Shown here one piece after another: positions 4,232 to 53,879 of a stretch of DNA of 64,000 nt (within the stretch, counting starts at the first letter, position 1; the number at the start of each line of letters is the position of its first letter). Source of the stretch: Dendrobates tinctorius (Eukaryota); assembly GCF_039654945.1 (NCBI RefSeq), contig NW_027361671.1, forward strand, positions 14,632,001 to 14,696,000. Reading direction: 5' to 3'. The notes beneath the pieces were generated by a model that did not search any database, was not told where the DNA came from, and saw only the letters and a list, made by a program, of their open reading frames with translations. The translations under genes and the position numbers were made by a program.

Positions 4232-4276
4232 CCCCGACGCGCGTTTCGGAGTTAAAAGAACTCCTTCCTCAGGGGG
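4232..4276 (-). ncRNA. Minimal type I hammerhead ribozyme (mirror copy)
   Basis: Reverse complement of 9447-9491. Confidence 0.9.
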
Positions 4277-5309: not shown

Positions 5310-7640
5310 CTACAAATATGGGGCATAGGAAATATTTTCATTAAGGCCACGTGGATGGATGGTGTCCAAAGTCCAAATCCATCTCGTTTCAGACCTCGCC
5401 AAGCGATTAGATAATTTGCCACCCCTTATGTTAATATTAAGAGCTTCAATGCCCCTTACTTTAAGGAGTGTAGCATTACATTGATGGAATTGCTTAAAAT
5501 GCCTGGGTAAGGTCTTTAGACTTAGATCGTCATCACACGTGGCAGCAGCCACTATACCTAGGACATGTTCCCTCGTGCGTACCTTTAACTGCCGTGTGGT
5601 CATCCCCACATAGATTAGACCACAAGGGCAAGTAGCGTAATAAATCACGTACCGACTGGTGCATGATATATGCTGCTTGATAGAAAATGTCCTGGTACCA
5701 TCATGATTGGTAAAAAGGGTACTCCTCTCAATATTGGGGCAAGCTATACATCTGCCACAGGGAAAACAACCATTTCTCATTGGTATATCATCCAGAAAAG
5801 TACGCAATGGACGATCAACATAGTGACTCGACACCAGCTGATCACGTAAATTCCTTGCCCTTCTAAAAGTAATGGATGGATATTCGGGGAGGAATTTATT
5901 CAAAATTGGATCAACCGCAAGGATCGGCCACGCCTTATTCATTGCGTCACGCATCATCTTATGCTGGGGGTGAAAGGAAGTGATGAATCGAACAACATCA
6001 CTCCCCTCCGTCTTATTGCGCCACCTATATAATAAATCATTACGACTCATATGTTTGGCACGTTGATAGGCCCTCTTAACACTCCGTCTACTGTATCCAC
6101 GAGATAGAAAACGAGCTTTCAATTCATTAGCACGATATTCAAAATCCATATCAGTGGAACAGATACGACGGAGACGTAAAAACTACCCCACTGGAATAGC
6201 TTTAATAAGATGACGCGGATGGCAAGACGAGGCGTGAAGTAAGGTATTACTAGATGTTTCCTTACGGTGGATGTCCGTCTGGATGGTGCCTTCTGTATCT
6301 TTTCTAATGGAAACATCCAAAAAATTGATCCTAGACGGATCCCAGGTCAGAGTAAGCCTAATGTTAAGATCATTGTTGTTCAAATCAGATATAAATTGTA
6401 GAAGGTCGATGGAGCTGCCCTGAAAGATAAAGAAGATATCGTCGATATAGCGTGCCCATAATTGGACACGCTCGATCAACCCCTGTTTATCAGACAGGAA
6501 GAGGTCCCTCTCCCACAGCCCCAGGAAGAGATTGGCATAGGATGGCGCAAAGGCCGCACCCATTGCAGTCCCCTGAAGCTGCAGGTAGAAGGACCCCTTG
6601 AACACAAAAAAGTTGTGTGTGAGAGTGAACTCTAAAAGTTCCAAGATGAGGTCCCTAAGTGCCACCGAAAGTGTGGAAGTAGTTAGAAAGAATTTAACGG
6701 CACGTAAACCATCAGCGTGCTTGATATTGGTATATAGGGACTCAACATCAGTGGAAACAAGAAGAGAATCACTCTCCATACAGAGTCCATCGACCTTCCG
6801 CAATAAATCTCCAGTGTCCTTGAGGAAAGACGGAAGACTGGATACCAACGGCTGAAGATGATGGTCAATCCATTTATTGATGTTCTCAAGGAAATTCCCT
6901 CGACCAGATATAATAGGTCTGCCCGGTGGTGACTTGATGTCTTTATGAATTTTAGGCAGGAGGTACAATGTGGCTATGGTAGGCTCTTTAACAGTGAGTG
7001 CTGCGGCCAATTGTTTGGTGACAGTGCCATTGATCACAGCCTTGTTGATGATCACATTCAACTTAGCAACAAAGGCCGAAAGGGGATTATATGTGAGTTT
7101 TTTATAACATACCGAGTTGTTTAATTGGCGTAATGCCTCCCTCTCGTACATTGCTATAGGCCAGATCACTACATTGCCACCTTTATCAGCCGGTTTTAAC
7201 AGCACATCTGAAAGATTTTGAAGGTATTTGAGCCTCACCCTTTCATCTTTGGTTAAATTGTCAACTCTGCCATACTTGGGAATCTTCTTAAATTCCTCAG
7301 TCACCACACGTACAAAAAGGTCTATACTCGGGCATGATGTAAATGGGGGGAATTTCACTGATCTCAACCGGATAGAGGGTGGAACCTTACCTCCCTCATC
7401 ATCATGCTCAGCCGCTAGCGTCTCCAAAGTTCTTATAGCCTCCTGCTCCTCTTCTGTGGGAAAAAGACACTGGAGATCATTATTAAAGAAATACCTTTTA
7501 AACAACAATGATCTAGCAAACAAGTTAAGATCCTTTACTGCAGTAAAGGTATCGAAACTAGGAGAGGGTGAAAAAGTAAGACCTCTTTCCAACAAAGACA
7601 AATCCACCTTTGTGAGAACATGTTGACTTAAATTGATCAC
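5310..7640 (-). pseudogene. Penelope RT/GIY-YIG polyprotein with one in-frame stop, N-terminally truncated
   Basis: KPADKGG, PPGRPIISG, DVESLYTNI, GTAMGAAFAPSYANLF, RYIDD, a Cys-rich linker (CFPCGRCIAC) and VIY...IYVGMT. ORFs 6183..7640 and 5310..6149 are in frame across TAG 6183-6185 (IPVG*FLRLRRICS). Confidence 0.92.
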
Positions 7641-9367
7641 CTTATTATCCTTCTGATGGAAATCAGAAACATATGAGTCGTAATGATTTATTATATAGGT
7701 GGCGCAATAAGACGGAGGGGAGTGATGTTGTTCGATTCATCACTTCCTTTCACCCCCAGCATAAGATGATGCGTGACGCAATGAATAAGGCGTGGCCGAT
7801 CCTTGCGGTTGATCCAATTTTGAATAAATTCCTCCCCGAATATCCATCCATTACTTTTAGAAGGGCAAGGAATTTACGTGATCAGCTGGTGTCGAGTCAC
7901 TATGTTGATCGTCCATTGCGTACTTTTCTGGATGATATACCAATGAGAAATGGTTGTTTTCCCTGTGGCAGATGTATAGCTTGCCCCAATATTGAGAGGA
8001 GTACCCTTTTTACCAATCATGATGGTACCAGGACATTTTCTATCAAGCAGCATATATCATGCACCAGTCGGTACGTGATTTATTACGCTACTTGCCCTTG
8101 TGGTCTAATCTATGTGGGGATGACCACACGGCAGTTAAAGGTACGCACGAGGGAACATGTCCTAGGTATAGTGGCTGCTGCCACGTGTGATGACGATCTA
8201 AGTCTAAAGACCTTACCCAGGCATTTTAAGCAATTCCATCAATGTAATGCTACACTCCTTAAAGTAAGGGGCATTGAAGCTCTTAATATTAACATAAGGG
8301 GTGGCAAATTATCTAATCGCTTGGCGAGGTCTGAAACGAGATGGATTTGGACTTTGGACACCATCCATCCACGTGGCCTTAATGAAAATATTTCCTATGC
8401 CCCATATTTGTAGTTACCTTTTTGAGTTGGTATTTGTGGACACTATGGTTCTATTATTTGTTTTTAAATTCTGTTTTTATCATTATAGTATTCTGAATAT
8501 GACTGGATGTTATCCGTAACGGTGGAAAGAGTTCGTAGATCGTCTGGCAACATCAAGCTGCTTAATGGATGCTGTATATTTTTGTTGTCTTATTTAATTT
8601 GACACAATTTTGAGATTTTTGTATCATTTATTAGAGTATTTAAACACATAATTTTTACATGTAATATGTGTTTATGGGGCTATATATATGTAATACTGCA
8701 GTGATACTGTTTCTGTTACTGGCTATGCTATATAACAGCTCAGTGTATTTTGTATTACTCTGTAATATTGTATATGTTTTGTATTTTGTGGCATTCCGTG
8801 CTATGGGGTAATTCTCCATACAATTTACCTCTTGTGTGTGGGTGGCTTATTTTGATGATTTTACTACATCTTGCCATACAGTGAATTTTTGTATTCAAAT
8901 CTTGCTAATTTTGATAATTGCACTCTTACATGGAGACCAGGTCCTGTATACTACAGCTTTAGTTTTGGATCCGGTCAATTATGAGCCAAACAATCTTCTT
9001 TCATTGAATTGGCCCATATATATGCACCTATCATGCGACCATCTACTTGTGGCTTTGGCCATTTGCTGTTTCTATAGGTCAGTGTTATAGACTTAGTGCA
9101 AATCTTGGTTATTTGTTACTAATACTACGTGGCTACTGGTTTGTCATTTAACACTGCATTTCGCCACATTCCACAAAATATTCAGTTGTTTTTATTATTT
9201 TTTGTTTGCCCCATCTTTTGCCCTGTTTAAATATGGCCGCTTTAGCCTGCTGTCATCTCTGCGCGTGCGCTTTGTCCGTCTGTTGGCCGGTGGGCGGTCT
9301 CTGCTCGGAGAGCTGGATCACGTGGGCCCGCGTGTTTCCGGCTCTGCCGTAGCACTGAACCAGCTGG

Positions 9368-9420
9368 CCAATGGCGGACAGCGCGCGCCTTGATGACTTC
9401 CGGCGGGCGTGCAATATAAT
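9368..9420 (+). promoter_or_regulatory. Putative Pol II promoter of the Penelope pseudo-LTR (mirror at ~4303-4355, minus strand)
   Basis: CpG-rich patch with CCAAT (9368), ETS-like ACTTCCGG (9396) and TATAA (9415), about 30 nt upstream of the hammerhead. Confidence 0.5.
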
Positions 9421-9446
9421 GCCCGATGGGTATACTACTCTCCACG

Positions 9447-9491
9447 CCCCCTGAGGAAGGAGTTCTTTTAACTCCGAAACGCGCGTCGGGG
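9447..9491 (+). ncRNA. Minimal type I hammerhead ribozyme
   Basis: CCCC-CTGAGGA-A-GGAGTT(CTTTT)AACTCC-GAAA-CGCGCG-TC-GGGG: helix I, catalytic core, helix II, palindromic helix III and a GUC cleavage triplet. Confidence 0.9.
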
Positions 9492-10692
9492 ATAGGACCG
9501 ACCTTGCTGCTCTCCCCCCCGTATTTCAGGTATAGTAATGCAGTTTATTATGTTACCATCATGTTGTGTACTATACATTAATTTTGTATGTGCGTGTTTG
9601 CACCTTGTCAGGGTATACTCCCTATGAAGGATTGTAGCACTTGCTGTATGATTTGTTATATTACATTCTATATAACCTCCTGACTTGTATTAGCTATACC
9701 ATCTAGCTCTGCATTCTATTATCCTGGCGGGGTGTTTGCAGCTTTGTTGGCCCTTCATGACCATCGTGTTCATTTATATGCTGTTCCTTTTCCCTGTCCA
9801 AACACTGTGTGTCCATATCCAATAATGTTTTAATATTATATTTAATAAATATCATAGTTTTATGGATCTTTTGACTGCTTTTTTGTTTGGTACTTTATAA
9901 CCAGATATATTGAAGACACATAAATCTAGGGAATCTAGAAAAAATCTTTCTATAGTTTGAATGATGTCAGAATATAAATGTTACTACCAAAACATTCCAC
10001 ATTGACTCATCTAAAAATTATGTCTGGTGTTCAGAGTTCAGACCAAAAAGCAGTGAGTGTTCTAGACTGAGGAGGCAAGCTGGACATCGCATCTAGCTCA
10101 GACTGGAGGCTCTTTGTACATTGAAAAGTTGAAGAGTTGAAAAGGTCTACTGAATTAATAGGTGCCAGTCTGTGATAAAGCATAGTAGAAATCTTTGGAA
10201 ATGGATTTCATAATGTGGTCAGGTCAGAATTAATATTAATATAACCTTCAGATATAGCTACAGATTTTTATTCATAATACAATATTGTCCCAACTTCACT
10301 CTCTAATATCAAAATGACACAAAACATAATCACGATCATATAGACCTATCAGAAACAGGTGTTTACAATCACTTGCAGAGGTTTAAGCTATTGTAATATT
10401 GTAATATGACCAAAGTCGCAACTTAAAGATGCTTGGAACAACCCATCAGTTTTCACAGACTGTATGTAAGCTTACAGGAGTTACCCAAAACATATATATT
10501 GATTGCCTATCCTTAGTACAGGTCATCAAAATCTTCTTGGAGAGGGTTAAACATCCCCTGTGTTGCAGCTCCTGTAGTGATCAGTTGCACACAGTATAAA
10601 GAGCTAGAAAGGCTTCATTCACTGTGTAGTGGACATTCTGGGGTACTGCAGGTCAGCTGTCATTCACTTCAATGGGGTGAGCTGAGCTGAAG

Positions 10693-20306: not shown

Positions 20307-20736
20307 AAAGTGTTTGGTTTCCAGGGGCAGTATGGTTGCAAAGCTGAACCTTAAAGAAATGTCCAGAAGGGCACCACCAGGAGTGGAGCCTGCAGCTTAA
20401 TTGGACTCAACACGGGCAACCTCAACCATGCCATCCACAAAAAAGCTGCACAGATTGCAAGCTTAATTCCGTTAACGAACGAGACTCAGGCATGCCCCCG
20501 CGGTCCGCGTCCAGCTTACTAGAGGGAAACGCGAGGCTCTGGCATGCGAGATCGGCCAATAACAGGTCTGTCATGCCCTTACATGTCCGGGGCTGCACGC
20601 GTGCTTCAATGAAAGGACCAGCATGTATCGCTTACAGGTGCGGATAACACGCTGAACCCCTTTAGTGATGGGGATCTGGGATTACAATTCTTCCCCGCGA
20701 ACAAGCATTTCCCAGTAAGTCAGTAAGTGCAGGTCA
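20307..20736 (+). pseudogene. Degenerate 18S rRNA fragment (3' half)
   Basis: AGTATGGTTGCAAAGCTGAA, GAAGGGCACCACCAGGAGTGGAGCCTGC, GACTCAACACGGG, TAACGAACGAGACTC, CAATAACAGGTCTGT and CCCAGTAAGT appear in 18S order, with substitutions and deletions. Confidence 0.9.
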
Positions 20737-21739
20737 ACCGTAATTCTGGAATTAGGCCTAAACGGCATTCCAGAAAGAATGTGAAAAAATTATGTGTCCA
20801 AACCACAGGTGCTGTAGGTTGCTTAACAGCTGGGCTCCTCTGCTGAGTAGCACACAGTTCTTACATAAACAGGCGGCATAGCTTGGTTCACGGGTGGCCA
20901 ACTCTGCTGAGTAGCATACACAGTTACTAGGCCCAAAGTATTAAGTGGTATAAATGCAGTCAAAAACTGGTTCTTTCATAAACTGGCGGCATAGCTCGGT
21001 TCACGGGTGGGCTCCTCTTCTGAGTAGCAGACACAGTTACTAGGCCGAAAAGAATTTTCAGGACAATATGTGGTAAAAAATTATTAGAAACACACACGGT
21101 GTAGCTCCTTCACAGGTGTACTACACCGCTGGCTACCAGACACCGCTAGTATGCCCTAAAACTGTCTATTATCATTGAAAACCATTATTAATGTGAAAAA
21201 AAAATACGCTTTTGTTTAACGAAACGTTCTCGAACGGAAACTCGAACAGCCGAATTTTAATCAAAGTGTTGTAGTTCGACGAACAGATCTAACACCGCCC
21301 AAAACAGCTAGAATTTGAACTTGGCCAACAGTTCCACTCAAACACCACTTATCTGTAATCAGGAGGCAGACTCAGACGGTCTCAGGAACAGTATGGATTC
21401 GACAAGATTGCAGAAAGTTGAGAAAGGGTACAGTATCACCTGATAACAGGTATATATAGCATAGTTTAAACATTTAAAATCTCTGTGTTTATTTCCAGAG
21501 TCCGACAAAGACACTCACAGCCTCAGTATGGATTAGACAACAATCTAAAAAGTAGAAAAAAGGAAATGTTTTTGAAGCGTACACCAGTATACACTGTTGG
21601 GGTATTTTTAAATCTTCATATATATTTCTGTCTCAGTAAGACAGTCCAGACTCACCGCAAGAGTACACGAGATGGATAAAAGTACAGACATAAAGTCGAG
21701 TGATTGCAGAAATTTAAGAATTATTAATCACGGGAAAAA

Positions 21740-26829: not shown

Positions 26830-28765
26830 AGTGGGGTACTCGGTACCGGACCGGTATTTCACAGGGAAGTGTCACAGTAGCGGTGACCCGGTCCGTGGCC
26901 CTGGGCATCCATGTAAGGGAGTGAAGTGATGGAATAAAGTTTATAAATAGATGATTTGTGACGCCACCTGTGGTGTTCGGCAATGAAGATGTTAAGCCGA
27001 CGCTGCAGACAGATCCGCTGGGACAGATGGTGTGGTGCAGCCAAGATGTTATAACCCTCCACAGGCAGGGCTGTTGTCCCAGGGCAGTGTAGATGGGTGT
27101 TGGGAAGGAAAGTGCAGTGTCAGGCACAGAGATGCAGCAGTGCCAGGGAGGTTGTAGCAAGAAGGCAAGGACACAATAGGTTGCAGTTTCTTACCTTTAG
27201 GCTAAGTGCACACGTACCGGAACTCTCGCGGAAATTACCGCGAGAATTCCGGAATTCCAGTCCGCGGGAAAATCGCATTTTAAATTCCCGCGATTTTCCC
27301 GTGGAAAAACTAGCATTTTGTAAGCGTATTTAGCTTGCAAAATGCTAGCGTTCTCCAAGCGTTCTGTAGCATCGCTTGGAGAACTGATTGACAGGTTGGT
27401 CACACTCGTCAAACATAGTGTTTGACAAGTGTGACCAACTTTTTACTACTGAGGTCGCCTATGCGGCATCAATAGTAAAAGATAGAATGTAAAAAAAAAT
27501 AAAAAATACTGTTATTCTTACCCTCCGACGTCCCGCGCATCCGTTCCCAGTAATCCTTTGCAAAAATGCCCGCGATGACGTCAGGTCTCGCGGTAATTCG
27601 CGATGATGTCGCGCGAATGACCGCGAGACTTCGTGATCCCGCGAGAACGGACACCATCGCGGGCATTTTTGCAAAGGACTACTGGGAACGAGAGCGTGGA
27701 GAGAAGCAGGAAGACTGCGCGGGACATCGGAAGGTGAGAATAACAATATTTTTTATTTTTAAATTCTATTTTTTACAGGGATATGGTACCCAAAGCCCGG
27801 AGGACAGTCTCCTCTCCTCCAGACCGTGGGTACCATCCGCAATTGTTCTGCTTACTTTCCGCATGGTGGGCACAGCCACATGCGGGAAGTAAGCGGAACA
27901 ATGCATTCCTATGGGTGCGGGATCGCCGCGATTCTGCAAATTAATGAGCATGCTGCGGTTTTTACTGCGAAGCGATTCCGCCGCGGTAAAAACCGCAGCA
28001 TTAGTACAGCATTGCGGAATCCCATAGGAATGCATGGGATGCTTATTTTTCGTGTTTTCGCGGCAAAATCGCACGGTTAAAACCACCGCGGAAACGCGAA
28101 AAAAACGCCACGTGTGAACTCAGCCTTACTTGGCAAATGCAGTCCAGGGTCCTGAGTACAGATGGCACAGGAGCTGGTTAGCCTGGAAGCAAATCAGAAA
28201 TCACTCTGACAGATGGGTTGTGCAGTCTCCTTACTAGCGCTCTCAATGAAGTACTCCCAGTACTGAGTTACACTGGAGTTCCTCCTTTCTGATGTTATCC
28301 ACACTCCACTCGCATGGCAGACAGCCGTAGCCTTCTATCTCTCTTGGCTCACCCGTCGCTGTTGTGCCTCCGAGGATTATGTGGGAATAGGGCATTTACA
28401 GCTTCCTATTCCTCTGGTTTCTGGTGCAGGACCGTTAGTATCCATACACCCTTGGAGACCAGGCTCCAGATCATGCGCTATCACTGGGACTGAGTTCTCC
28501 ACTTTCCTCAGTCTCCTCAGCTTTTCTCCTCCACATCTGCACATGAAGCCCTCCTCACACTAACTTACTCACTCCTTCCTGGCCCCCAGAGACAGCTCCT
28601 CCCCTCAGTTCTGGGTTCAGAGCTCCCTCTGCTGACCCGGAGTGGGAACTGTGTTGCATGCAGTGATTAACTGCCAGAGAGACCCTTCATTGCTTCCAGG
28701 CATGACATCACTCTCCCTGGAGGAAGGCAATGCAACTGTGGCGACCATACTCCTGCGGGAGCCAC
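26830..28765 (-). mobile_element. LTR copy (10693 family) interrupted by a MITE
   Basis: Collinear similarity to 10715-11460 on both sides of the MITE. The right boundary is approximate. Confidence 0.6.
27200..28125. mobile_element. PIF/Harbinger-type MITE
   Basis: TIRs GGCTAAGTGCACACGT and ACGTGTGAACTCAGCC. TTA on both sides. Internal palindromes. Confidence 0.8.
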
Positions 28766-32446: not shown

Positions 32447-33098
32447 TTAGATGAAGGTCTGTCTTTTTCAGCGATGAGTACCGCTTTTGTCTTGAATGCA
32501 ATGATAGCTAGAGATGTACCTGGAGACCACATGGGCAATGCCAGGATGCAAGTTGCTTACGGTACTGTGAGTAGCCTGTATGGCCTGCAATGTCTCCAGA
32601 CTTATATCTCAATGAGCACATCTGGGATGTCATTAGTCAGCAATTGCAAAGGGAACTTCAGATTTTGATGATTTTCGTGCCCAAATGCATTCAGTATGAC
32701 AGAAAATTCTAAAGACATCCTTTAATAATTTCAATGACATCATGATAATGCATGTAAGTGTATATATTTTTGCATGTGGTGCTCATACTTGATACTGAAT
32801 ACATTAAGATGCTTTGAAGAAGTCATTTACATTTTTCCATCTTTTACATGTCAATAACATGTCCATCAATCTTGTGATTTTCATAATTCCATGACGTTTC
32901 CTTCTTGGCATAAATCCCATATGTAGAACAAGCAAATTATCAATACAAATGATACAATGCCATTCACATGATTATAGCACCATAGTCTTACCTCTTTAAC
33001 ATTGGCTTGATATCACTGTTTGCTACCATTGGCATACTGGCATTGAATCCACAGTTTTAAGATCTCTATCTACCATGAGACTGAATGATAAAATGGTA

Positions 33099-34700
33099 CA
33101 GTCATATGTTAAAGTTTGGGCACCCCTATTAATGTTAACCTTTTTTCTTTATAACAATTTTGGTTTTTGCAACAGCTATTTCAGTTTCATATATCTAATA
33201 ACTGATGGACTCAGTTATATTTCTGGATTCAAATGAGGTTTATTGTATTAACAGAAAATGTGCAATCTGCATTTAAACAAAATTTGACCGGTGCAAAAGT
33301 ATGGGCACCTCAACATAAAAGTGACATTAATATTTCGTAGATCCTCCTTTTGCAAAAATAACAGCCTCTAGTCGCTTCCTGTAGCTATTAATGAGTTCCT
33401 GGATCCTGGATGAAGGTATTTGTGACCATTCCTGTTTACAAAACAATTCCAGTTCAGTTAAGTTTGATGGTCGCCGAGCATGGACAGCCTGCTTCAAATC
33501 ATCCCACAGATGTTCAATGATATTCAGATCTGGGGACTGGGATGGCCATTCCAGAACATTGTAATTGTTCCTCTGCATGAATGCCTGAGTAGATTTGGAG
33601 CGGTGTTTTGAATCATTGTCTTGCTGAAATATCCATCCCCTGCGTAACTTCAACTTCGTCACTGATTCTTGCACATTATTGTCAAGAATCTGCTGATACT
33701 GAGTTGAATCCATGCGACCCTCAACTTTAACAAGATTCCCGGTGCCGGCATTGGCCACACAGCCCCAAAGCATGATGGAACCTCCAACAAATTTTACTGT
33801 GGGTAGCAAGTGTTTTTCTTGGAATGCTGTGTTTTTTAGCCTCCATGCATAACGCCTTTTTGTATGACCAAACAACTCAATCTTTGTTTCATCAGTCCAC
33901 AGGACCTTCTTCCAAAATGTAACTGGCTTGTCCAAATGTGCTTTTGCATACCTCAGGCGACTCTGTTTGTGGCGTGCTTGCAGAAACGGCTTCTTTCACA
34001 TCACTCTCCCATACAGCTTCTCCTTGTGCAAAGTGCGCTGTATTGTTGACCGATGCACAGCGACACCATCTGCAGCAAGATGATGCTGCAGGTCTTTGGA
34101 GGTGGTCTGTGGATTGTCCTTGACTGTTCTCACCATTCTTCTTCTCTGCCTTTCTGATATTTTTCTTGGCCTGCCACTTCTGGGCTTAACAAGAACTGTA
34201 CAGGTTAAATCTCTGAGACAACTTTTTGTAACCTTCCTCTGAAAAGCTATGTTGAATAATCTTTGTTTTCAGATCATTTGAGAGTTGTTTTGAGGATCCC
34301 ATGATGCCACTCTTCATAGGAGAATCAAATAGGAGAACTACTTGCAAGTGGCCACCTTAAATACCTTTTCTCATGATTTGATACACCTGGCTATGAAGTT
34401 CAAAGCTCAATGAGGTTACAAAACCAATTTAGTGCTTCAGGAAGTCAGTAAAAAGTAGTTAGGAGTGTTCAAATCAAGAAAATGATAAGGGTGCCCATAC
34501 TTTTGCACCGGTCAAATTTTGTTTAAATGCAGATTGCACATTTTCTGTTAATACAATAAACCTCAATTGAATCCAGAAATATAACTGAGTCCATCAGTTA
34601 TTAGATATATGAAACTGAAATAGCTGTTGCAAAAACCAAAATTGTTATAAAGAAAAAAGTTTAACATTAATAGGGGTGCCCAAACTTTAACATATGACTG
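33099..34700 (-). mobile_element. Tc1 (DD34E) transposon with ~211-bp TIRs
   Basis: TIRs at 33099-33309 and 34490-34700 (CAGTCATATGTTAAAGTTTGGGCACCC...). TA on both sides. Confidence 0.95.
33327..34302 (-). pseudogene. Tc1 transposase pseudogene
   Basis: MGSSKQLSNDLK start, a deletion and frameshift near 34200, TGA at 33996-33998, then WTDETK, FQQDND, and SPDLNIIE with 34 residues between D and E. Confidence 0.92.
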
Positions 34701-34904
34701 TATCTATATGCCAATCTAGGTTACCAAACTTAAGCCACCATGCCCTATGCAGACGTCTTCTGTCCCATGAATGGCAAATATGGCATCTGCAAATTAGCAG
34801 GTACACTTGGTAGAGTTTTCATGTACTTAAAATTGCCCTGATCATGATTTCAATCCAGTAGGACAATTCCTGTAAGTAATTATATCTACATATTAGATAC
34901 TGAT

Positions 34905-44890: not shown

Positions 44891-45960
44891 GTATACCAAG
44901 TTGCTCCACCACGTCAAGGTAACCCTTAATGGAACAGGCCCTATCTAATGTATTTAAAACCTGAACATGTGAACAGTGTCTAAATGAACAGGACCCAGAC
45001 AGGCGCTTCATAGTATGGGCACGTGGTGCAAGGCAGCTTTTTATGTGCATGTCACACAATAGAGGGGTGGGGTCTCTCAAGCCAAGGATAAGCAAGGAGA
45101 AAATTGATTAAAAACACATGTGACATGCACAAATGTGAACAAGTCGGTCGGACAGTGTTCATACTATGAAGTGCCTGTCTGGGTCCTGTTCATTTAGACA
45201 CTGTTCACATGTTCAGGTTTTAAATACATTAGATAGGGACTGTTCCATTAAGGGTTACCTTGACGTGGTGGAGCAGCTTGGTATACATTTTTTTGCAAAA
45301 AAACATATCGACTAAATACCCTGTATTTGTTGCCATCTTTTTACCAGCACTTGCTGATTACTGTCATATTTGTTACTGCAGGGTATTTCTGCACATTTGT
45401 CATTCTGTGTTTTCGTTTTGTGTTTCAGTCAGTGGGTGGTGTGAACACTGTCCGACCGACTTGTTCACATTTGTGCATGTCACATGTGTTTTTAATCCAT
45501 TTTCTCCTTGCTTATGCTTGGTTTGAGAGAATCCACCCCTCTATTGTGTGACATGCAGATAAAAAGCTGCCTTACACCACGTGCCCATACTATGAAGCGC
45601 CTGTCTGGGTCTTGTTCATTTAGACACTGTTCACATGTTCAGGTATTACATACATTAGATAGGTAGGGACTGTTCCATTAAGGGTTACCTTGACGTGGTG
45701 AAGCAGCTTGGTATACATTTTTTTGCAAAAAAAGTATCGGCTAAATACCCTGTATTTGTTGCCATCTTTTTACCAGCACTTGCTGATTACTGTCACATTT
45801 GTTACTGCAGAGTATTTTATGCACATTTGTCATTCTGTGTTTTCTTTTTGTGTTTCAGTCAGTGGGAGGTGTGAACACTGTCCAACCGACTTGTTCACAT
45901 TTGTGCATGTTACATGTGTTTTTAATCCATTTTCTCCTTGCTTATGCTTGCTTTGAGAGA
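44891..45960. repeat. ~425-bp satellite (right part), with an orientation flip at ~45160
   Basis: 44891-45161 continues the interrupted unit. 45160-45960 is its reverse complement. Confidence 0.92.
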
Positions 45961-48900
45961 CTAGAGGGACTCTGACCCCGTGTCCTTAGGGCAGAGTTCT
46001 GTGACCGCATTCTGTGCGTTTCGTTGCCGAGCTCTGTGAGCTAAACAGGCTCCGGCATTTATGTTCTCTGTGAGGTAACAAATCTCGCACTGTACACACC
46101 GGGTGACGTTAACCCTTGTGTGTCCTTCCTTTATACCGCCATATAGCATCCATCATTACCTAGCAGCAGTATACCACCTCTGCACAGTGGACCCCGGGTT
46201 GCGATCGCACTTTCTCATATTTTATTTGTATAGTTCACCGCGCTATACTGAGAAGATATGAACAACCTGGTTGTAGATAGGCAATAGTGGTATTTGTTAA
46301 TAAAATTATAGGTACTCACTTGTGGTAGAAGAGCTGTAGAATATTCTATGAAGGTTGTAATGTCTAGATAGTGAATAGTAGTTGCAGATAATTTCCTCTG
46401 GTAGTCGGTAGTGCTGGTGGGGTAATAATAGTAGTAGTATTAAAATAACAATAAATTATATTTATACACCACACTGTAGGTCCTAAGTCTGCCGTACTCG
46501 TCACGAGTCATTTCAGGCGATTTTATTCCATTGTCTTGTAGAATTTGATGATTTAATAGCAGTGGAGCATACGTACCCCAAAAGGTTTGGTGCTGAGGCA
46601 GCTGATGGGGGATAGTAGAAAGGCAGTTATAGGTGTGCCTACTTCAGATTAGGAAGATATACCAATGTTTTGCCTGGCACTTACTACTGTGTCTGTAGTA
46701 GAAATAATGAGGTAGTCACTCTGTAGTCGACCAATATGGGAGCACTAATGAATGAGTAGTCTATACATGGCTAAATGGTACTTGCCTGAATGGTCCGCTT
46801 AGAAAGGGGGGTATACAGTAGCTGTGGTTTGCTTGTCCTCTATTTTTTTATTAGAAGTTCCATAGACTGCGAAGGGGAAATGAAAATTAAAAAGTAAAAA
46901 TTAAAAAGCATATAGCTCAATCTCGTGATTAAGCCAAAAGGCTTAATTCATTTGTATATACCGCTGCATTATAAATATTACCAGCAACGTACAATTCTTA
47001 TTAGCATGTAGGTATTCTTTATGGTTTTAATACAATTTTACACTATATTTATTGTTATTTTAATACTACTACTATTATTACCCCACCAGCTCTACCGACT
47101 ACCAGAGGAAATTATCTGCAACTACTATTCGCTATCTAGACATTATAACCTTAATAGAATATTCTACAGCTCTTCTACCACAAGTGAGACAGAGGGACAG
47201 GGAGTTGCTAATGATGAAGTTGGCCTTTTCGGACTGGAGACACCTCCTGGAGGGGGCACGTCACCCTTTCCAGGTGTTCACAGACCACAAAAACTTGGTA
47301 TATTTGCAGACGGCCCAGCGGCTAAATTCTCGCCAGGCCAGATGGTCCTTGTTCTTCTCCCGCTTCCACTTTACCCTCCATTTCCTATCCAGTGAGAAGA
47401 ACGTCCAGGCCGATGCTCTCTCCCGGTCCATGGTGTCATTGGAGGAGGAGGAGCCTCGGCTGATCGTCCCATCCAAGAGCCTGAGGACCGTGGCTCCGGT
47501 CGCTCTTGAGTCAGTACCTCCGGGCAAGACATTTGTCCCTGCCCGTCTGCGACCAGAGATCCTCTCTTGGGCTCATTCGTCCAGGGTGGGTGGACATTTC
47601 GGGACAAAATGGACCTCTGAGCTTCTGGTGAGGACGTACTGGTGGCCGCATATGGCCCGTGATGTCAGGGACTGTATTTAGGATTGCGTCTCTTGCGCCC
47701 AGAATAGGTCCTCTCGGCAGTGGCACGCTGGGTTACTTTATCCCCTGCCGGTAGCAGACAGGCCCTGGGATATGGTCAGTATGGACTTTATGGTGGGGCT
47801 GCCCAAGTTCAGTGGCAGTACAGTCATTTGGCTTGTCACCAACCATTTCTCCAAGATGGTGCACCTGGTACCTCTCTCCCGGTTACCTTCTGCACGGAGC
47901 CTGGCAGGGTTGTTCATTAAGCATGTTTTCCACCTGCATGGCATGCCGGACAAGATTGTCAGCGACCGGGGTCCCCAGTTTGCGTCTCAGTTCTGGAGAG
48001 AGCTCTGCAGCCTGCTCAGCACTGAGCTAAATCTCTCTTCGGCCTATCATCCCGAGAAGAACGGGTTGGTAGAGAGAGCCAACCAGACCCTGGTCACATA
48101 TCTACGACATTTTGTCTCAGCCAGGCAGGTTGACTGGGCATCCTTGCTGCTGTGGGTGGAGTTCGCTTTGAACAATGCTGTGGCCGACTCCACTGGCCAG
48201 ACCCCATTCCTCCTAAATTACGGCCAGCATCCACGCATCCCTGTGCCCATGCCCGTGTCGCACACCGGTTCCAGGGTGGCAGACTGGGCGGTGGAGGCAT
48301 GTGACATTTGGGATCGCACTCAGGATGTTATCCGGGCCTCCAAGGAGAGAATGAGGGCCTCCGCCGACAACCACCGGCGCTCCGCTCCGACCTTTGCTCC
48401 TAGCGACTTAGTGTGGCTCTCCGCCCGTAACATCAGGCTGCGGGTCGAGTCTGCAAAATTCGCACCTCGCTACATTGGCCACTTCAAGGTCCTTGAGCAG
48501 ATCAACCCTGTGGTCTACCGTCTGGCCCTGCCACCACACTTGGCTATCTCTGACACCTTCCACGTGTCCCTCCTTAAGCCTGTCCACATGTCCCGGCTCT
48601 CCGAGTCATCTGCCACTCCAGGGACTAAGTACTCCATTCGGTCCACTGAGCATGCCCGTGGGACGATCTCTCATTGGAGATCGGAGGTCACATGCTCAGG
48701 TCCTTCTCCAGCTCAGATTAGACCATCAGGAGGGTCAGGAAGGTCCCAGAAGGATGCGGCTATAAAAGGTTCGCATGGCCGCCTGGCCATGCGCTAGTAT
48801 AGACTGCATTACCAGACTATGAGGAGTGAGTGTTGTATGCATGTATGAATGTCTCTGGTGAATGACTCTTTAAGAAACCCCTACCCTTGGTACACATGTG

Positions 48901-49379
48901 TTGTGCAGCATAGCCTGTTAAGCGCCCAGGCTTAGGTGTAGATAGAGGCAGAGTCTGAGACTGGCATCAGTGTTCACCGGTGGCTCTGCACGCCACGGTG
49001 CACGTGCTCGACACTCCAGCATAGTCAGCGTCTATAGTGGCATCCACAGGTGCGATGCCACGTGCTCAGAAGGTCTAGAGGGACTCTGACCCCGTGTCCT
49101 TGGGGCAGAGTTCTGTGACCGCATTCTGTGCGCTCCGTTTCCGAGCTCTGTGAGCTAAACAGGCTCCGGCATTTATGTTCTGCAGTAGTGCAACTCTGTG
49201 AGGTAACAGAGCTCGCACTGTACACACCGGGTGACATTAACCCTTGTGTGTTCTTCCTTTATACCGCCATATAGCGTCCGCCATTACCTAGCAGCAGTAT
49301 ACCACCTCTGCACGGTGGACCCCGGGTTGCGATCGCACTTTCTCATATTTTATATTTAGTGCGATCCGCAACCCTAACA
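45961..49379 (+). mobile_element. Second, deleted Gypsy element: partial LTR, RNase H-integrase fragment, LTR
   Basis: 45961-46230 matches 49075-49350. ORFs 47184..47681 (TDHKNL, ADALSR, GGHFG) and 47772..48797 (integrase core). The LTR ends ACCCTAACA. Confidence 0.85.
46246..47188. mobile_element. AT-rich fold-back insertion with 142-bp inverted arms
   Basis: 46315-46456 is the reverse complement of 47047-47188, with a few mismatches. Confidence 0.7.
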
Positions 49380-49894
49380 GTAATTAGTAGTATGCTCGTG
49401 ACAAATGTCATCCTAATGAAGGATTACAACAATTTCCAAAGATAATATAATATAAAGGGACATTCATGGACAAAATTAGACCTATCGCACTGATATGTAA
49501 CACAGACCATGAGCAAAAAGCTCCAAAAAAACGCGATAAATAGATCAACACATAATACGGTAGAAAAATATAAATTTATTAACAAAGGTATATTAAAACA
49601 TCGAATACAGATCAATATAAGGGGATGTTAGGAAAATTAGTGTCAAATCCAAAAAGAATGGGCTAGACAGCAAAGGGAGACAGAACTGGACAGCAAACTG
49701 GTTTAACAAGGTTGATGTAAGAGGAGAGGAAAGGTAATGTAATTGATGGAATGGTAAACTCAAAAACATCATTATATCGAGTGTCCATATTTCCTCACAT
49801 AGCATCAAGGCATCATATGTCCACAATGGGCGCAATATAAAAGTGTAAAGATCGTAAGAGGACACTCACCAGCGGCTACCAGTCTGTCCACCCA

Positions 49895-49935
49895 CCCCGA
49901 CGGGCGTTTCGGAGGGTCAGTCCTTCATCAGGGGG
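49895..49935 (-). ncRNA. Minimal type I hammerhead ribozyme (mirror copy, GUC site)
   Basis: Minus strand: CCCC-CTGATGA-A-GGA(CTGACCC)TCC-GAAA-CGCCCG-TC-GGGG. Confidence 0.85.
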
Positions 49936-49939
49936 CATG

Positions 49940-49980
49940 CCCCCTGATGAAGGACTGACCCTCCGAAACGCGCATCGGGG
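49940..49980 (+). ncRNA. Minimal type I hammerhead ribozyme (helix III variant)
   Basis: CCCC-CTGATGA-A-GGA(CTGACCC)TCC-GAAA-CGCGCA-TC-GGGG. Confidence 0.82.
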
Positions 49981-51174
49981 TGGGTGGACAGACTGGTAGC
50001 CGCTGGTGAGTGTCCTCTTACGATCTTTACACTTTTATATTGCGCCCATTGTGGACATATGATGCCTTGATGCTATGTGAGGAAATATGGACACTCGATA
50101 TAATGATGTTTTTGAGTTTACCATTCCATCAATTACATTACCTTTCCTCTCCTCTTACATCAACCTTGTTAAACCAGTTTGCTGTCCAGTTCTGTCTCCC
50201 TTTGCTGTCTAGCCCATTCTTTTTGGATTTGACACTAATTTTCCTAACATCCCCTTATATTGATCTGTATTCGATGTTTTAATATACCTTTGTTAATAAA
50301 TTTATATTTTTCTACCGTATTATGTGTTGATCTATTTATCGCGTTTTTTTGGAGCTTTTTGCTCATGATCTGTGTAACCCTAACAGTAAGACAGGAAATT
50401 TCTAGGAAGTTAGATGAGACGGGGCCAGGGTGCCCAAGTGTCCACATGGGCTATAGGCCCGGACAGCTTGGCAGCCACGTTACATTAAAGTACTGCAGCC
50501 CACGTTACCCACGGCCACTGTGTGTCATAGAAGTGGGCCAGTACAGGAAAGGAAAGATGTGGTGACTGATCACCTGGGCGGATGCTTTTAGGGCAGGAGT
50601 CGGTTGGACAGAGGAGATGAAGGAAGATGGAGCTTCAATGAGATCGGTACAGACGGGCCGGATGCTTTACCAGAGGCAACCAAACCTGATGACTGATGAT
50701 TTTGAGTTTGGGGCGAAACAGGCAAAAAGAATTGTCATCATGGCAAGGTCAGGCCAAGAAGGAAGTGGGGAGCAGTCTAGGACGGTCCGGTCTGGGTGTG
50801 TACTGCACAGAGGTAACAGCCAAGCAGGGAAAGATGAGGAACCAAGTGAATATCATGATGTGCCAACTGTGGATGTAACGTGTGAAGTAATAAGTAAAGA
50901 GAATGCTCAAGTTAACCTGGACTGTGTCTCCATTACTGGGGGTCGCCTGAAGGAGGGACCATCGTCGCCTGGGACGTGCCCAGGGAAGTCTGGATTTGGA
51001 GATACAGGTATGCTGAAGAGAATACAGTTTTCTGTAGAGGAAGGACTGGACATAGATGTTACAGTGTCTCAGGTCATGATTACAGTCCTGCCCCTCCTTT
51101 ACAGTGGCTATGGGGTGGCCGGGGCATTTCTACAGTGAGGGGGTCACGATGTGAAACATCACTATTGTTAATAC

Positions 51175-51459
51175 CAATATAAGAAAAAAATGGAACAGCA
51201 AAATACCAACAAGTGGGTGCAAAGGCCTCCTCAGCAAATCATCCAATACTTGCCCCAATCCAGATAAAGAGAAAGAGGAAGGCAGCACTCCATAGAATTT
51301 TTAGTGAAAAAATGTGGGTTTTATTCAGACCCACACTTGAAAAAGGCTCAGTGTGAGCCGAAACGTCGCCATGCCATGTGAGTCTGAATAAAATTCACAT
51401 TTTTTCACTAAAAATTCTATGGAGTGCTGCATTCCACTTTCTCGTTTTCTTTTTATCTT
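51175..51459. mobile_element. Mini fold-back element with a hammerhead-like core
   Basis: 67-bp arms at 51269-51335 and 51377-51443. Near-TSD TATTGTTAATAC / TATTGTTAGTAC at 51163-51174 and 51460-51471. Confidence 0.75.
51336..51368 (+). ncRNA. Hammerhead-like motif, U3:A8 core variant, helix I truncated
   Basis: C-TTGAAAA-A-GGCTCA(GTG)TGAGCC-GAAA-CG-TC-G. Confidence 0.6.
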
Positions 51460-53879
51460 TATTGTTAGTACAGTATATTTAATTTTTTCAGATTCTGTTA
51501 ACATGGGCAGAACAAAAGAGAGGTACTGTTACCATGCAGGGCTCAAGCGCCATGCTGCTACACTGGTTTTCATCAATTTGAGCAGTGTAGATGCGGGGGA
51601 AAATTAGTGGAGAGTGATGTAGAAGTGATCGGTCATAGGTGTATGTTTGCTTCTTACTGTAGAGACGTGACTGTGCTGGAAGAAGTCATAGTGGTCTATG
51701 CTGGATGAAGAAGAAAAGTGAAAATGAATTACTGCAGTTAGATATGTAACTGGTAAATCACTGGATTTAGCTGTTGTGTACATACTCATATGACCTACAG
51801 TACAGAGCCCCTGTGTATAATGTCACTGGTGGTAAATTTTAATCTTAGTACAGTGGTTTTTAATAATGGTCAGTAAGGTTGCATTCAGTTACTAAGTAGT
51901 GGTAAGATGAGGTCTGTACTGGTCATGGTGTTTATTCCTTGTATGCTATTTGCTGTTGGTGCATTCATTTTGTTATAGCAGACTTGTGTAGTAACAGTAT
52001 GGTTATGGTTGCATTTGTTATTTGGTAACTGTATGTCTACTAATTAAGAATTATCTTATTGCTATGTTTTCTATCAGAAGTGTATTTTAACGCTAGTCTT
52101 TTTTTTTAATGGGGTGGAGAGTGAACACATTTCTTTATAGGATCTAGATTGCTATAGGGGCCCATACATCTGACCAACGTGAGGTTGGTTCCCTGATTCA
52201 AAGTTTGCACAAGGGACCATAGAGCTCTAGTTACGCCACTGCTGCAAGTGTTGCACCCCATACGCTGTAACCTGGACTCTGCAAGAAGTCAAATAGCTAG
52301 CATATGAAATGTTGCAGTTGATACACTGCTTCATCAGAGATCTAGTCATTGCTCACCTTTTAGAGTAAATAAGTACTTTGTTATAGCTCCTTACAAAATA
52401 AATTAAGGGACAATTTTTGACGTAGAAAAGAGGCATTTTCCGCTACACATCTATATCTTCTCTTTAATCCTAAAAAAAAGCATCATCGTTAAAAAGTTAT
52501 GATATATATTAATCAGTGATGGTAGATATTTTCTGATATTTGCCACTGAAGGGAGTAAGGAAACCCACTAGTTGAGCTACGCATATGAGAAGCCAAACCA
52601 AACCTGCCTCAGGTTTTTTTTTTTTTTTTAAAATGTGGTCTAGCAAATTCATGTCTATCAGAATCTGCTAAACAAAGAGATAGATCTATTCACAAAAGAA
52701 AATATGCAACATGTTTCTACTTGTACTATACCATTAACATCAGCATAGCCCATTTTAGGTGTTATAAATATGAAAACCTTTAATTCAAAGCAGGTCAGGG
52801 AGATATAGATGAAGCTAAAATTGGTGCATTATGTGTATGGCAGCAAATAGATGAGCAAATCTAGTATAATAAGCCATTTGAGTGGCACTGGAAAATAAAA
52901 CATCACTATGACCCATTCATCATTATGTCGATATGACTCTGTGGAAACTAAAGTATAAATTGCAATCAGCACTGTATTTCCATGAGTCTAGCTGAAATCT
53001 CAGAGGTTACATAGACCTATTTGTCTGCAGCGATGAGCTCTAAACTAATGTACACATTGCATCCTTTTAACTTAGACCATTTGCTCTACGCGTCTTCTTC
53101 CAAGGGTCAGTTCTGAAATGTAAAATAGCATTGTGTACGTACATAGCTTTTAAACAGAAAATCCAGAAGACAAGAAAGACCAGGATGAGGGGAAGATAGA
53201 ATAGGTGGTTGTTTAAAAGGATCTCTGGGAATATAAGAAAAAGACAATAAATATCATTATAAATAAATTCTGAAATATCTGTAATCAGTAAATTACACAT
53301 TTTGTCTAAGGAAGTACCGTAATTTGAATTAAAATGGCCACAATCTTGTCTAACCCATCAATGTTATTAAGCTAAGTGCCTTTGAGAATGTGCAGTAAGA
53401 AGCTTTGTTCCCTAACTTCCCTAACTTCATGTGTAAGAAGAACAGTCCCTATTGGACGTTTTGCGCTAATACTGGAGATAGCAGGAGTTCTGAAAAAAGA
53501 AGAAGCTGCTCACATTGCTTTACACCCTATCTTTCTGCCCAAGGGGCTTATCAAGCAGCGACAGGGGGGCATCAGACCCCGGGCGCAGCCGATAAGGGGC
53601 ATTTTTTTGAGCCATCTGATGCGGTGGTCCAAGGTGGCTTCCTTGAAGGCTACATTTTGCCATCCCCATAGTGGGAGGTGTTAGTTCTCTGAGTGTTTAA
53701 GATGAAAATACAATTGCAGCCCTGACCATCGGCACTTTTGGGTCAGGGTAACGAGAGCAGTGTGATCAGACCAGCTGATCACACTGCTGACGTCATGCAC
53801 CGGCATCTCATAGGCGCATACAAAGTTGGTGGTAAGTGCTCCAGTGAAGCTGAAGACACCAAAGATTTATTGTAATAGG

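What the first reader, a model, noticed from the sequence alone, without database searches (positions are those of the whole stretch)
49370..50389. Non-coding 876-bp spacer-less palindrome with two back-to-back hammerhead ribozymes at its apex
Seen: a 992-bp insert with a 14-bp TSD, a 116-nt unpaired tail and two 438-bp arms meeting at GGGGGCA|TGCCCCC. Each arm begins with a minimal type I hammerhead (CTGATGA...GAAA...TC), followed by a GTGAGT splice donor at ~50006. There is no convincing ORF. Each ribozyme carries a different single change from an inferred GAAACGCGCGTC consensus. Known: Penelope-like elements and retrozymes carry minimal hammerheads, which are thought to work as dimers. Inference: this is a non-autonomous ribozyme-headed RNA mobilised in trans by a Penelope RT/GIY-YIG. 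Its cDNA appears to have folded back at the RNA 5' end, still including the uncleaved ribozyme. A read-through transcript would form a 438-bp dsRNA hairpin that sequesters the ribozyme.
Basis: partly seen in the sequence, partly recalled or inferred. Interest (0 to 1): 0.9.

Follow-up and report, generated by a model that had tools for sequence, protein, structure and literature searches.

The report
Palindromic Penelope fragment with hammerhead ribozymes
This is a real, young 992-bp insertion in a frog genome made of two head-to-head copies of the ribozyme-bearing non-coding leader of a Penelope-like retrotransposon; it is a very clean example of a known by-product of how these elements integrate, not a new kind of element.

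Summary
Two 441-nt arms (49497-49937 and 49938-50378) meet with no spacer. There is an exact 14-bp target-site duplication, a 113-nt extension on the left side only, and no credible ORF. Each arm starts at the first base of a Penelope-type minimal type I hammerhead, followed by a GTGAGT donor.

The window holds two more Penelope-like insertions with the same plan: a TSD, a 91-142-nt tail on one side, and head-to-head copies. One of them has a full RT ORF. That plan is the published signature of Penelope-like integration.

In RNA-like libraries of the same species, abundant contigs run at least 2.4 kb past the end of the tail. The arms are therefore most likely the 5' leader (hammerhead, exon 1, intron) of a longer, probably autonomous element. 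They are probably not a dedicated ribozyme-headed non-autonomous RNA. The family has only tens of copies.

Best mechanism: both cut target strands primed cDNA at two internal start sites. Both cDNAs ran to the uncleaved RNA 5' end and were joined head to head.

The scan noted similar hammerhead palindromes on other DNA of this genome. This is a new member of a known kind, of moderate interest.

The parts
49370..49383 (.). Left copy of the 14-bp target-site duplication AACCCTAACAGTAA. Its first ~10 nt are the terminus of a very high-copy flanking repeat.
   Evidence: Exact direct repeat D3. Loose ends with low agreement at 49379 and flank word depth of 1e4-3e5.
49384..49496 (-). 113-nt 'tail': the 3' extension of the minus-strand copy that the plus-strand copy lacks. 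It is read as the stretch between two internal RT start sites.
   Evidence: Present on one side only. Contigs of other copies run through both of its ends (X1 record 5; X10 record 14; X12 record 18).
49497..49937 (-). Left arm: a minus-strand copy of the element's 5' leader (hammerhead, short exon 1, intron-like sequence).
   Evidence: Inverted repeat I1. No coding similarity to 120 PLE proteins.
49893..49937 (-). Hammerhead copy with GAAACGCCCGTC (a G-to-C change in the palindromic helix III).
   Evidence: Rfam Hammerhead_1 14.1 bits, model 1-45. Motif hit. Dimer helix III energy -3.1 against -13.3 kcal/mol for the consensus.
49938..50375 (+). Right arm: a plus-strand copy of the same leader, ending at the proximal RT start site about 438 nt from the hammerhead start.
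   Evidence: Inverted repeat I1. The arms share private substitutions (49587=50288, 49766=50109) against all other laid copies.
49938..49982 (+). Hammerhead copy with GAAACGCGCATC (a G16.2-to-A change at a CpG). The arm begins exactly at model position 1 (the first base of helix I).
   Evidence: Rfam alignment, 12.0 bits, model 1-45. Dimer helix III energy -8.1 kcal/mol.
50006..50011 (+). GTGAGT splice-donor-like site 68 nt after the arm start (its mirror is at 49864-49869 on the minus strand).
   Evidence: Read from the sequence. A donor 42-85 nt after the hammerhead start is also present in the two other PLE insertions. D. virilis Penelope has an intron 46 bp after its TSS (PMC2377424).
50376..50389 (.). 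Right copy of the target-site duplication.
   Evidence: Exact direct repeat D3.

Best explanation
The insert is a dead-on-arrival integration product of an endonuclease-bearing Penelope-like element (PLE) of a frog. It consists of two head-to-head cDNA copies of the first 438 and 554 nt of the element's RNA. That stretch is the non-coding leader, which opens with a minimal type I hammerhead followed by a short exon 1 and intron-like sequence. Proposed steps: (1) the PLE RT/GIY-YIG complex cut both target strands 14 bp apart, giving the TSD (inferred). (2) Each freed 3' end primed reverse transcription at one of two internal start sites about 113 nt apart, so one copy carries the 'tail' (inferred from the anatomy, and shown in vitro for another PLE). 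(3) Both cDNAs ran off at the same RNA 5' end, the first base of hammerhead helix I. This is probably the transcription start, and it means the template had not self-cleaved (shown: both arms start there; that this is the start site is inferred). (4) The two cDNA ends were joined head to head, possibly through the self-complementary AT at the centre, giving a spacer-less palindrome (inferred). The three arm differences arose afterwards or through RT error. Each one weakens the palindromic helix III that these ribozymes need in order to act as dimers. The insert has no function of its own. If read through, it would make a long hairpin RNA.
For: The anatomy is confirmed. The hammerhead has every PLE-type hallmark. 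The core is CUGAUGA...GAAA...UC. There is a 6-bp helix I, an extra A between positions 9 and 10.1, a G10.1-C11.1 pair, and a palindromic ACGCGCGU in the consensus (criteria from PMC4209133). The same plan appears in three of three PLE insertions in this window. The 3682-9896 insertion has a 15-bp TSD, a 142-nt tail on the left only, 2233-nt identical head-to-head arms, a complete RT ORF (homologues of 743-770 aa align from residue 1) and a hammerhead 451 nt from the short end. The 51171-51459 insertion has an 8-bp TSD, a ~91-nt tail, 74-nt arms and a decayed hammerhead at the centre. Published PLE features match. An inverted 5'-truncated copy and a one-sided tail are described in PMC8557442, and inverted terminal repeats of variable size in PMC2377424. 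A purified PLE protein cleaves and extends both target strands and starts RT at two internal sites that define the tail, with unprocessed RNA as the substrate (PMC11167929). The arms are part of a longer transcript. X10 and X12 contigs of 895 and 2632 nt end on 49383-49569 and run on for up to 2445 nt past the tail end, and tail depth is similar to arm depth in WGS contigs. The 5' end recurs. An independent junction in X10/X12 has the sense copy starting at (C)ATGCCCCC, and two contigs of a second species span a head-to-head hammerhead apex that differs by 2 nt. In the other PLE family, CCAAT (9368) and AATATAAT (9413) boxes sit about 30 nt upstream of the hammerhead start.
Against: No read or contig spans this locus's apex, and no empty site was recovered. 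The parent element could not be fetched, so its ORF is inferred only from contig length. The kind of runs X10/X12 is not on record; I read them as RNA only because the insert is strongly enriched over its very high-copy flanks. The tail is 113 nt, not the published 30-40 bp. That the apex is a transcription start is an inference. In X10/X12 the abundant form is transcribed through an inverted junction, so transcription there starts further upstream. Dual-strand priming has so far been shown only in vitro, for an Anolis element.
Confidence: 0.6

Rival explanations
1. Single-primed cDNA with a template switch at the RNA 5' end. One target strand primes a 554-nt cDNA. At the RNA 5' end the RT switches onto nascent cDNA and copies it back for 438 nt. 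It then jumps to the other target end.
For: The arms share private substitutions against all other copies, so they come from one template sequence. PLE RTs lack RNase H, and RTs of this kind are known to switch templates (general knowledge). The final plus strand reads as one continuous antisense-then-sense strand.
Against: An intramolecular snap-back needs a loop, but the centre is symmetric to the base with no spacer. In all three insertions in the window the second copy ends only 91-142 nt short of the first. For the 3682-9896 insertion that is 142 nt out of 3985, which is unlikely if the jump-off point were arbitrary. A purified PLE extends both strands (PMC11167929).
Confidence: 0.2
2. 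The 438/554-nt unit is a dedicated non-autonomous element, a retrozyme-like small non-coding PLE. It would carry an internal promoter, a hammerhead and an RT recognition site, and be mobilised in trans by a Penelope RT/GIY-YIG.
For: The insert is non-coding. D. virilis Penelope has an internal promoter (PMC2377424), so a unit running from the transcription start to the RT start could be self-sufficient. Animal retrozymes are reported to derive from PLE pLTRs (bioRxiv 10.64898/2026.07.22.740005). Most min-HHRs in Xenopus lie outside full PLEs (PMC4209133). Unchecked scan notes report many small hammerhead elements in this genome.
Against: Copy number is low, with summed word depth about 100-350 against 7-10 per single-copy contig. 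Abundant contigs continue at least 2445 nt beyond the tail. Tail depth equals arm depth, so most copies are not short units. There is no tandem direct arrangement.
Confidence: 0.15
3. Assembly artefact: a fold-back chimeric read or a mis-join created the palindrome.
For: No public contig spans the apex of this locus. PLE inverted structures are known to disturb assemblies (PMC8557442).
Against: The two flanks are different sequences joined by an exact 14-bp TSD. The arms differ at 3 sites. One side has a 113-nt tail. The same plan occurs twice more in the window. A fold-back chimera would invert the flank as well.
Confidence: 0.03
4. A foldback-type or MITE DNA transposon with long terminal inverted repeats that happens to carry hammerhead-like motifs.
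For: It has long perfect inverted repeats and a TSD.
Against: The inverted repeats do not both reach the TSD, because of the 113-nt one-sided tail. A 14-bp TSD is atypical for cut-and-paste families. The hammerhead plus donor cassette is shared with a coding PLE in the same window.
Confidence: 0.02

Closest known systems
Complex tandem/inverted insertions of EN+ Penelope-like elements (Penelope/Poseidon, Neptune; Evgen'ev and Arkhipova; Craig et al. 2021, PMC8557442; Schostak et al. 2008, PMC2377424)
   Same: It has a TSD, strong 5' truncation, an adjoining inverted copy that forms inverted repeats, a tail at one end only, a hammerhead in the pLTR/leader, and a retained intron-like sequence.
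   Different: Both copies here stop at the same base, the hammerhead start, so the result is a spacer-less, perfectly symmetric and wholly non-coding palindrome. The tail is 113 nt rather than 30-40 bp.
In vitro integration by the Anolis Poseidon element PAc (Frangieh et al. 2024, PMC11167929)
   Same: Both target strands are cleaved and extended. RT starts at two internal sites of the RNA that are not homologous to the target. The stretch between those sites is the genomic tail. Uncleaved RNA is the main substrate.
   Different: In PAc the start sites lie 111-118 nt inside the ORF and about 35 nt apart. Here they lie 438 and 554 nt after the hammerhead start, in non-coding and probably intronic sequence. 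Head-to-head joining was not reconstituted in vitro.
Twin priming inversions of LINE-1 (Ostertag and Kazazian 2001; cited from my own knowledge)
   Same: Both ends of a staggered break prime cDNA on the element's RNA, giving an inverted 5' segment within a single TSD.
   Different: L1 twin priming gives inversion with a deletion or duplication at an internal point of one RNA, not a symmetric palindrome ending at the RNA 5' terminus. The enzyme family is also different.
Animal non-LTR retrozymes and satellite-2-type hammerhead repeats (Cervera and de la Pena 2020; Li, Clavereau and Pollet 2026, bioRxiv 10.64898/2026.07.22.740005)
   Same: It is non-coding, has the same kind of dimer-dependent type I hammerhead, derives from PLE pLTR/leader sequence, and depends on a PLE RT.
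   Different: Retrozymes are head-to-tail tandem units that can be cut into monomers and circularised. This insert is a head-to-head pair with no direct repeat, so no unit-length RNA can be released from it.

Membership tests
Penelope-like element insertion (EN+ PLE) | [quoted passage not shown] | tested here: met
   Exact 14-bp repeat at 49370-49383 and 50376-50389.
Penelope-like element insertion (EN+ PLE) | An extra 'tail' is present at only one end of the insertion | tested here: met
   49384-49496 is present on the left side only. It is 113 nt against the published 30-40 bp. One-sided tails of 142 and ~91 nt occur in the two other insertions.
Penelope-like element insertion (EN+ PLE) | An inverted copy adjoins the 5' end, forming inverted repeats | tested here: met
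   441-nt arms with 0 spacer.
Penelope-like element insertion (EN+ PLE) | A single ORF with a telomerase-like RT and a GIY-YIG endonuclease | tested here: not met
   No ORF over 90 aa, no Pfam hit, and no tblastn match to 120 PLE proteins. The insert is a non-coding fragment. A coding parent is inferred only from contigs that run on for 2.4 kb.
PLE-type minimal type I hammerhead (Cervera and de la Pena 2014; Rfam RF00163) | Conserved core CUGANGA ... GAAA ... UH, with helix I closing the motif | tested here: met
   Both copies align over model positions 1-45 with a 6-bp helix I. Pattern hits are 4 against 0.18 expected.
PLE-type minimal type I hammerhead (Cervera and de la Pena 2014; Rfam RF00163) | [quoted passage not shown] | tested here: met
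   CUGAUGA-A-GGA...UCC-GAAA, read. The same is seen in the other PLE. The criterion comes from PMC4209133.
PLE-type minimal type I hammerhead (Cervera and de la Pena 2014; Rfam RF00163) | A palindromic helix III/loop 3 that allows an active dimer | tested here: inconclusive
   The family consensus ACGCGCGU is palindromic (-13.3 kcal/mol as a duplex). The two copies here read ACGCCCGU (-3.1) and ACGCGCAU (-8.1).
PLE-type minimal type I hammerhead (Cervera and de la Pena 2014; Rfam RF00163) | A score at or above Rfam's gathering threshold (34 bits) | tested here: not met
   12.0 and 14.1 bits. The intact hammerhead of the neighbouring PLE reaches 27.4 bits, so minimal PLE hammerheads in general fall under this threshold.
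PLE-type minimal type I hammerhead (Cervera and de la Pena 2014; Rfam RF00163) | Self-cleavage after C17 | not testable with these tools
   There is only an indirect hint. In X10/X12 contigs an inverted copy ends, within 1 nt, at the predicted cleavage site.
Animal non-LTR retrozyme | Head-to-tail tandem units, each with a hammerhead, that release unit-length or circular RNA | tested here: not met
   There is no direct repeat of the unit; only the inverted pair is present.
Foldback / MITE DNA transposon | Terminal inverted repeats that both abut a short TSD of fixed length | tested here: not met
   The left arm is separated from the TSD by 113 nt, and the TSD is 14 bp.

The most novel reading that the evidence does not exclude
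Symmetric hammerhead-apex palindromes may be natural records of the exact 5' end of the PLE template RNA, and of dual-strand target priming in vivo. On this reading the hammerhead occupies the very first nucleotides of the transcript, so self-cleavage would remove the cap plus about 40 nt and sort RNAs into capped mRNA and uncapped template. The two RT start sites would lie inside the 5'-UTR intron: a polypyrimidine-AG motif follows 30 nt after the tail end in the parent contigs. Only unspliced RNA could then be copied, which would explain why PLEs keep their introns.
Probability: 0.15. Interest if true: 0.7.

Novelty: new member of a known kind. Interest (0 to 1): 0.3.

Why it matters
How Penelope-like elements build their tandem and inverted structures is still an open mechanistic question. 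The authors of PMC8557442 say so, and PMC11167929 offers only in vitro data. This young insertion is unusually clean: both 3' ends, both 5' ends and the TSD can be read to the base. It gives in vivo support for three points. Both target strands can prime. There are two internal RT start sites. Uncleaved RNA that begins at the hammerhead serves as template. A genome-wide census of such palindromes in this PLE-rich frog could turn these points into statistics. By itself the locus is a dead non-coding fragment, and it does not define a new class of element.

Tried and rejected
(1) Rfam at gathering thresholds finds no hammerhead in the window; only sub-threshold hits appear in a local search. The apex also gives spurious microRNA-precursor hits, which simply reflect the hairpin.

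(2) MFE folding of single hammerheads is no better than shuffled sequence, as expected for dimer-dependent minimal motifs, so it carries no information here.

(3) I tried to fetch the parent element. I looked up Logan contigs for five PLE proteins found with the neighbouring element's RT. None contains the arm, the tail or the 30-nt run-on sequence. Look-ups in large frog assemblies return no DNA.

(4) Searching the arm's 90-aa ORF against 5.8 billion proteins, to pull out other contigs, gave nothing.

(5) I looked for an empty site. No contig skips the insert, and the only other copy of the left-flank repeat in the window stops before the junction.

(6) A shared TACTACT motif near the distal RT start of two families is absent from the third insertion, so I dropped it as evidence.

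(7) The literature search found no paper that describes head-to-head hammerhead palindromes in PLEs, or twin priming in PLEs.

Full report
**Observation**

The sequence is as described. The repeat finder reports arms 49497-49937 and 49938-50378: 441 nt, 99% complementary, nothing between them. It also reports an exact 14-nt direct repeat, AACCCTAACAGTAA, at 49370-49383 and 50376-50389.

The arms differ at four mirrored positions. The outermost lies where the right arm overlaps the TSD, so the true arms are about 438 nt with three differences. The stretch 49384-49496 (113 nt) has no partner on the right.

The centre reads GGGGGCA|TGCCCCC. No ORF exceeds 90 aa. That ORF has no Pfam hit and no homologue among 5.8 billion proteins. 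None of 120 PLE proteins aligns to the insert.

**The ribozymes**

A tight pattern, CTGAKGA-N(6-24)-GAAAC-N(2-8)-TC, hits four times in 64 kb against 0.18 expected. There is one hit on each arm, and one on each arm of a second element.

Both copies align over all 45 positions of Rfam Hammerhead_1. The arm's first base, 49938, falls at model position 1, and helix I has six pairs. The scores are only 12.0 and 14.1 bits against a gathering score of 34. The intact hammerhead of the neighbouring element reaches 27.4 bits.

The motif carries the hallmarks that Cervera and de la Pena listed for PLE hammerheads (PMC4209133):
- a G10.1-C11.1 pair;
- a palindromic helix III.

The consensus ACGCGCGU is supported by the Rfam consensus, by the neighbouring element, and by contigs of other family members that read GT after 49973. 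The left copy has ACGCCCGU and the right copy ACGCGCAU. As dimer helices these give -3.1 and -8.1 kcal/mol, against -13.3 for the consensus. Single-motif MFE folding carries no information here.

**Context in the window**

The window comes from an anuran. The RT of a second element matches dendrobatid, Rhinoderma and Hyla proteins at up to 60% identity.

That second element occupies 3682-9896:
- It has a 15-bp TSD (ATAACCAGATATATT) and a 142-nt extension at the left end only.
- It has two 2233-nt arms that are 100% identical and joined head to head.
- It has a complete ORF on the minus strand, to which homologues of 743-770 aa align from residue 1.
- Its hammerhead lies 451 nt from the short end.
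- CCAAT and TATA-like boxes sit about 75 and 30 nt upstream of the hammerhead start, and a GT donor lies 85 nt after it.

A third, older insertion occupies 51171-51459. It has an 8-bp TSD, a tail of about 91 nt on the left, 74-nt arms, and a 41-nt centre holding a decayed hammerhead followed by GTGAGT.

All three Penelope-type insertions in this window therefore share one plan: a TSD, a tail of about 90-140 nt on one side, and two head-to-head copies. The finding differs only in that both copies reach the same 5' base.

**Evidence from public runs**

- *Flanks.* In whole-genome contigs of the same species (X1) and of a second species (X14), the flanks are extremely high-copy repeats, with word depth of 1e4-3e5. 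The left repeat ends at about 49379.
- *Copy number.* The insert's interior has a summed depth of only about 100-350, against 7-10 for single-copy contigs. That corresponds to tens of copies. Tail depth is close to arm depth.
- *Second species.* It lacks the interior entirely. It keeps only about 100 nt on each side of the apex, and two of its contigs span a head-to-head apex that differs by 2 nt.
- *Enrichment in X10 and X12.* These two small runs, of unrecorded kind, show the insert enriched several-thousand-fold over its flanks. I read them as RNA.
- *Run-on contigs.* In those runs, contigs of 895 and 2632 nt end on 49383-49569 and continue for up to 2445 nt beyond the tail end. The first 30 run-on letters end in a polypyrimidine-AG motif.
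- *Shared substitutions.* The two arms share substitutions (49587=50288, 49766=50109) that no other laid copy has.
- *What is missing.* No contig spans the apex of this locus, and no empty site was seen.

**Interpretation**

The published picture of PLE insertions fits point by point. It includes 5' truncation, an adjoining inverted copy and a one-sided tail (PMC8557442), and inverted terminal repeats of variable size with an intron 46 bp after the transcription start (PMC2377424). A purified PLE protein also cleaves and extends both target strands, starts RT at two internal sites that delimit the tail, and prefers uncleaved RNA (PMC11167929).

I conclude that the arms are the 5' leader of a longer, probably autonomous PLE: hammerhead, a 68-nt exon 1, then intron-like sequence. 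Each cut target strand primed a cDNA, one at about 438 nt and the other at about 554 nt from the RNA 5' end. Both cDNAs ran to that end, and the two were joined head to head.

The recurrence of the 5' terminus, within 1-2 nt, in two other junctions argues that it is a defined RNA end, most likely the transcription start. This is also supported by the promoter-like boxes in the neighbouring family.

A purely intramolecular fold-back is disfavoured for two reasons. The centre has no loop. And in all three insertions the second copy ends close to the first copy's 3' end. A template switch between two cDNAs cannot be excluded.

A dedicated non-autonomous family is disfavoured by the low copy number, the equal tail and arm depths and the 2.4-kb run-on. 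It is not excluded, because PLE promoters can be internal.

An assembly artefact is very unlikely. The flanks are unlike each other, the TSD is exact, the arms differ at three sites, and the same plan occurs three times in the window.

**Comparison and novelty**

The insert works like, and belongs with, PLE inverted insertions. It fails the coding criterion, so it is a fragment rather than an element. It is not a retrozyme in the strict sense, because it has no tandem units.

I found no paper that describes symmetric hammerhead-apex palindromes. Unchecked notes from this scan record similar palindromes, and very many hammerhead and Penelope features, elsewhere in this genome. I rate it a new member of a known kind, with moderate interest as a clean in vivo record of PLE integration.

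**Unexplained**

In X10/X12 the dominant form does not have the order of this insert. An antisense copy of 49978-50114 ends, within 1 nt, at the predicted hammerhead cleavage site. It abuts a sense copy that starts at (C)ATGCCCCC. That sense hammerhead then runs, after GCGCGT, straight into 50104 onwards, skipping about 128 nt. The coincidence with the cleavage site hints that self-cleaved RNA can also be a template. I could not phase or fetch these contigs.

Noticed in passing
window 3667-9911: A very young Penelope-like insertion with a 15-bp TSD (ATAACCAGATATATT), a 142-nt tail at the left end only, and two 2233-nt arms that are 100% identical and head to head. The complete RT ORF runs on the minus strand (7640 to 5313). 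The hammerheads (27.4 bits) lie 451 nt from the short ends, with CCAAT and TATA-like boxes just upstream of them.
   Followed up: partly
window 51163-51467: An older mini-insertion of the same plan: TSD TATTGTTA, a tail of about 91 nt on the left, 74-nt inverted arms, and a 41-nt centre with a decayed hammerhead followed by GTGAGT. Its inversion point lies 9 nt past the predicted cleavage site.
   Followed up: partly
window 49761-50114 (contigs of runs X10 and X12): In RNA-like libraries the abundant form of this family has an antisense copy that ends within 1 nt of the hammerhead cleavage site. It is fused to a sense copy starting at the hammerhead's first bases, and that sense copy skips about 128 nt (49976-50103). 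This may be a trace of a self-cleaved template. The structure is unexplained.
   Followed up: partly
just beyond window 49383 in the parent contigs: The 30 letters that follow the tail end in the parent transcript end in TTTTGTTTTAG, a motif like a 3' splice site. Together with the GTGAGT at 50006, this suggests that both RT start sites lie inside a 5'-UTR intron.
   Followed up: no
window 49436-49837 and 50039-50373: This family is absent (zero depth at 90% likeness) from the second species (run X14), which shares the flanking repeats at similar depth. Only about 100 nt around the hammerheads is conserved there, so the family's leader is specific to this species or fast-evolving.
   Followed up: partly
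window 49302-49383: The left flank is the terminus of a repeat with word depth of 2-3e5 in two species. It ends in a 49-nt hairpin (49325-49373) about 6 nt before the repeat's last base. The PLE integrated exactly at that terminus. The repeat was not identified.
   Followed up: no
window 47772-48797: An ORF with Ty3/gypsy-type integrase core and SH3 (Tf2-1-like) domains lies just upstream, so the insertion sits in a nest of older transposons.
   Followed up: partly
window 20325-20752: A degenerate fragment of eukaryotic small-subunit rRNA (Rfam 120 bits, model 1118-1666 with internal deletions), presumably a retro-copied or decayed rDNA piece.
   Followed up: no
window 27495-27760; 33097-34702; 44891-45961; 46315-47188: Further inverted repeats of 45-238 nt with short spacers. 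The first is CpG-rich with GGTGAG motifs facing outward. None has a hammerhead core, and I did not examine them further.
   Followed up: no
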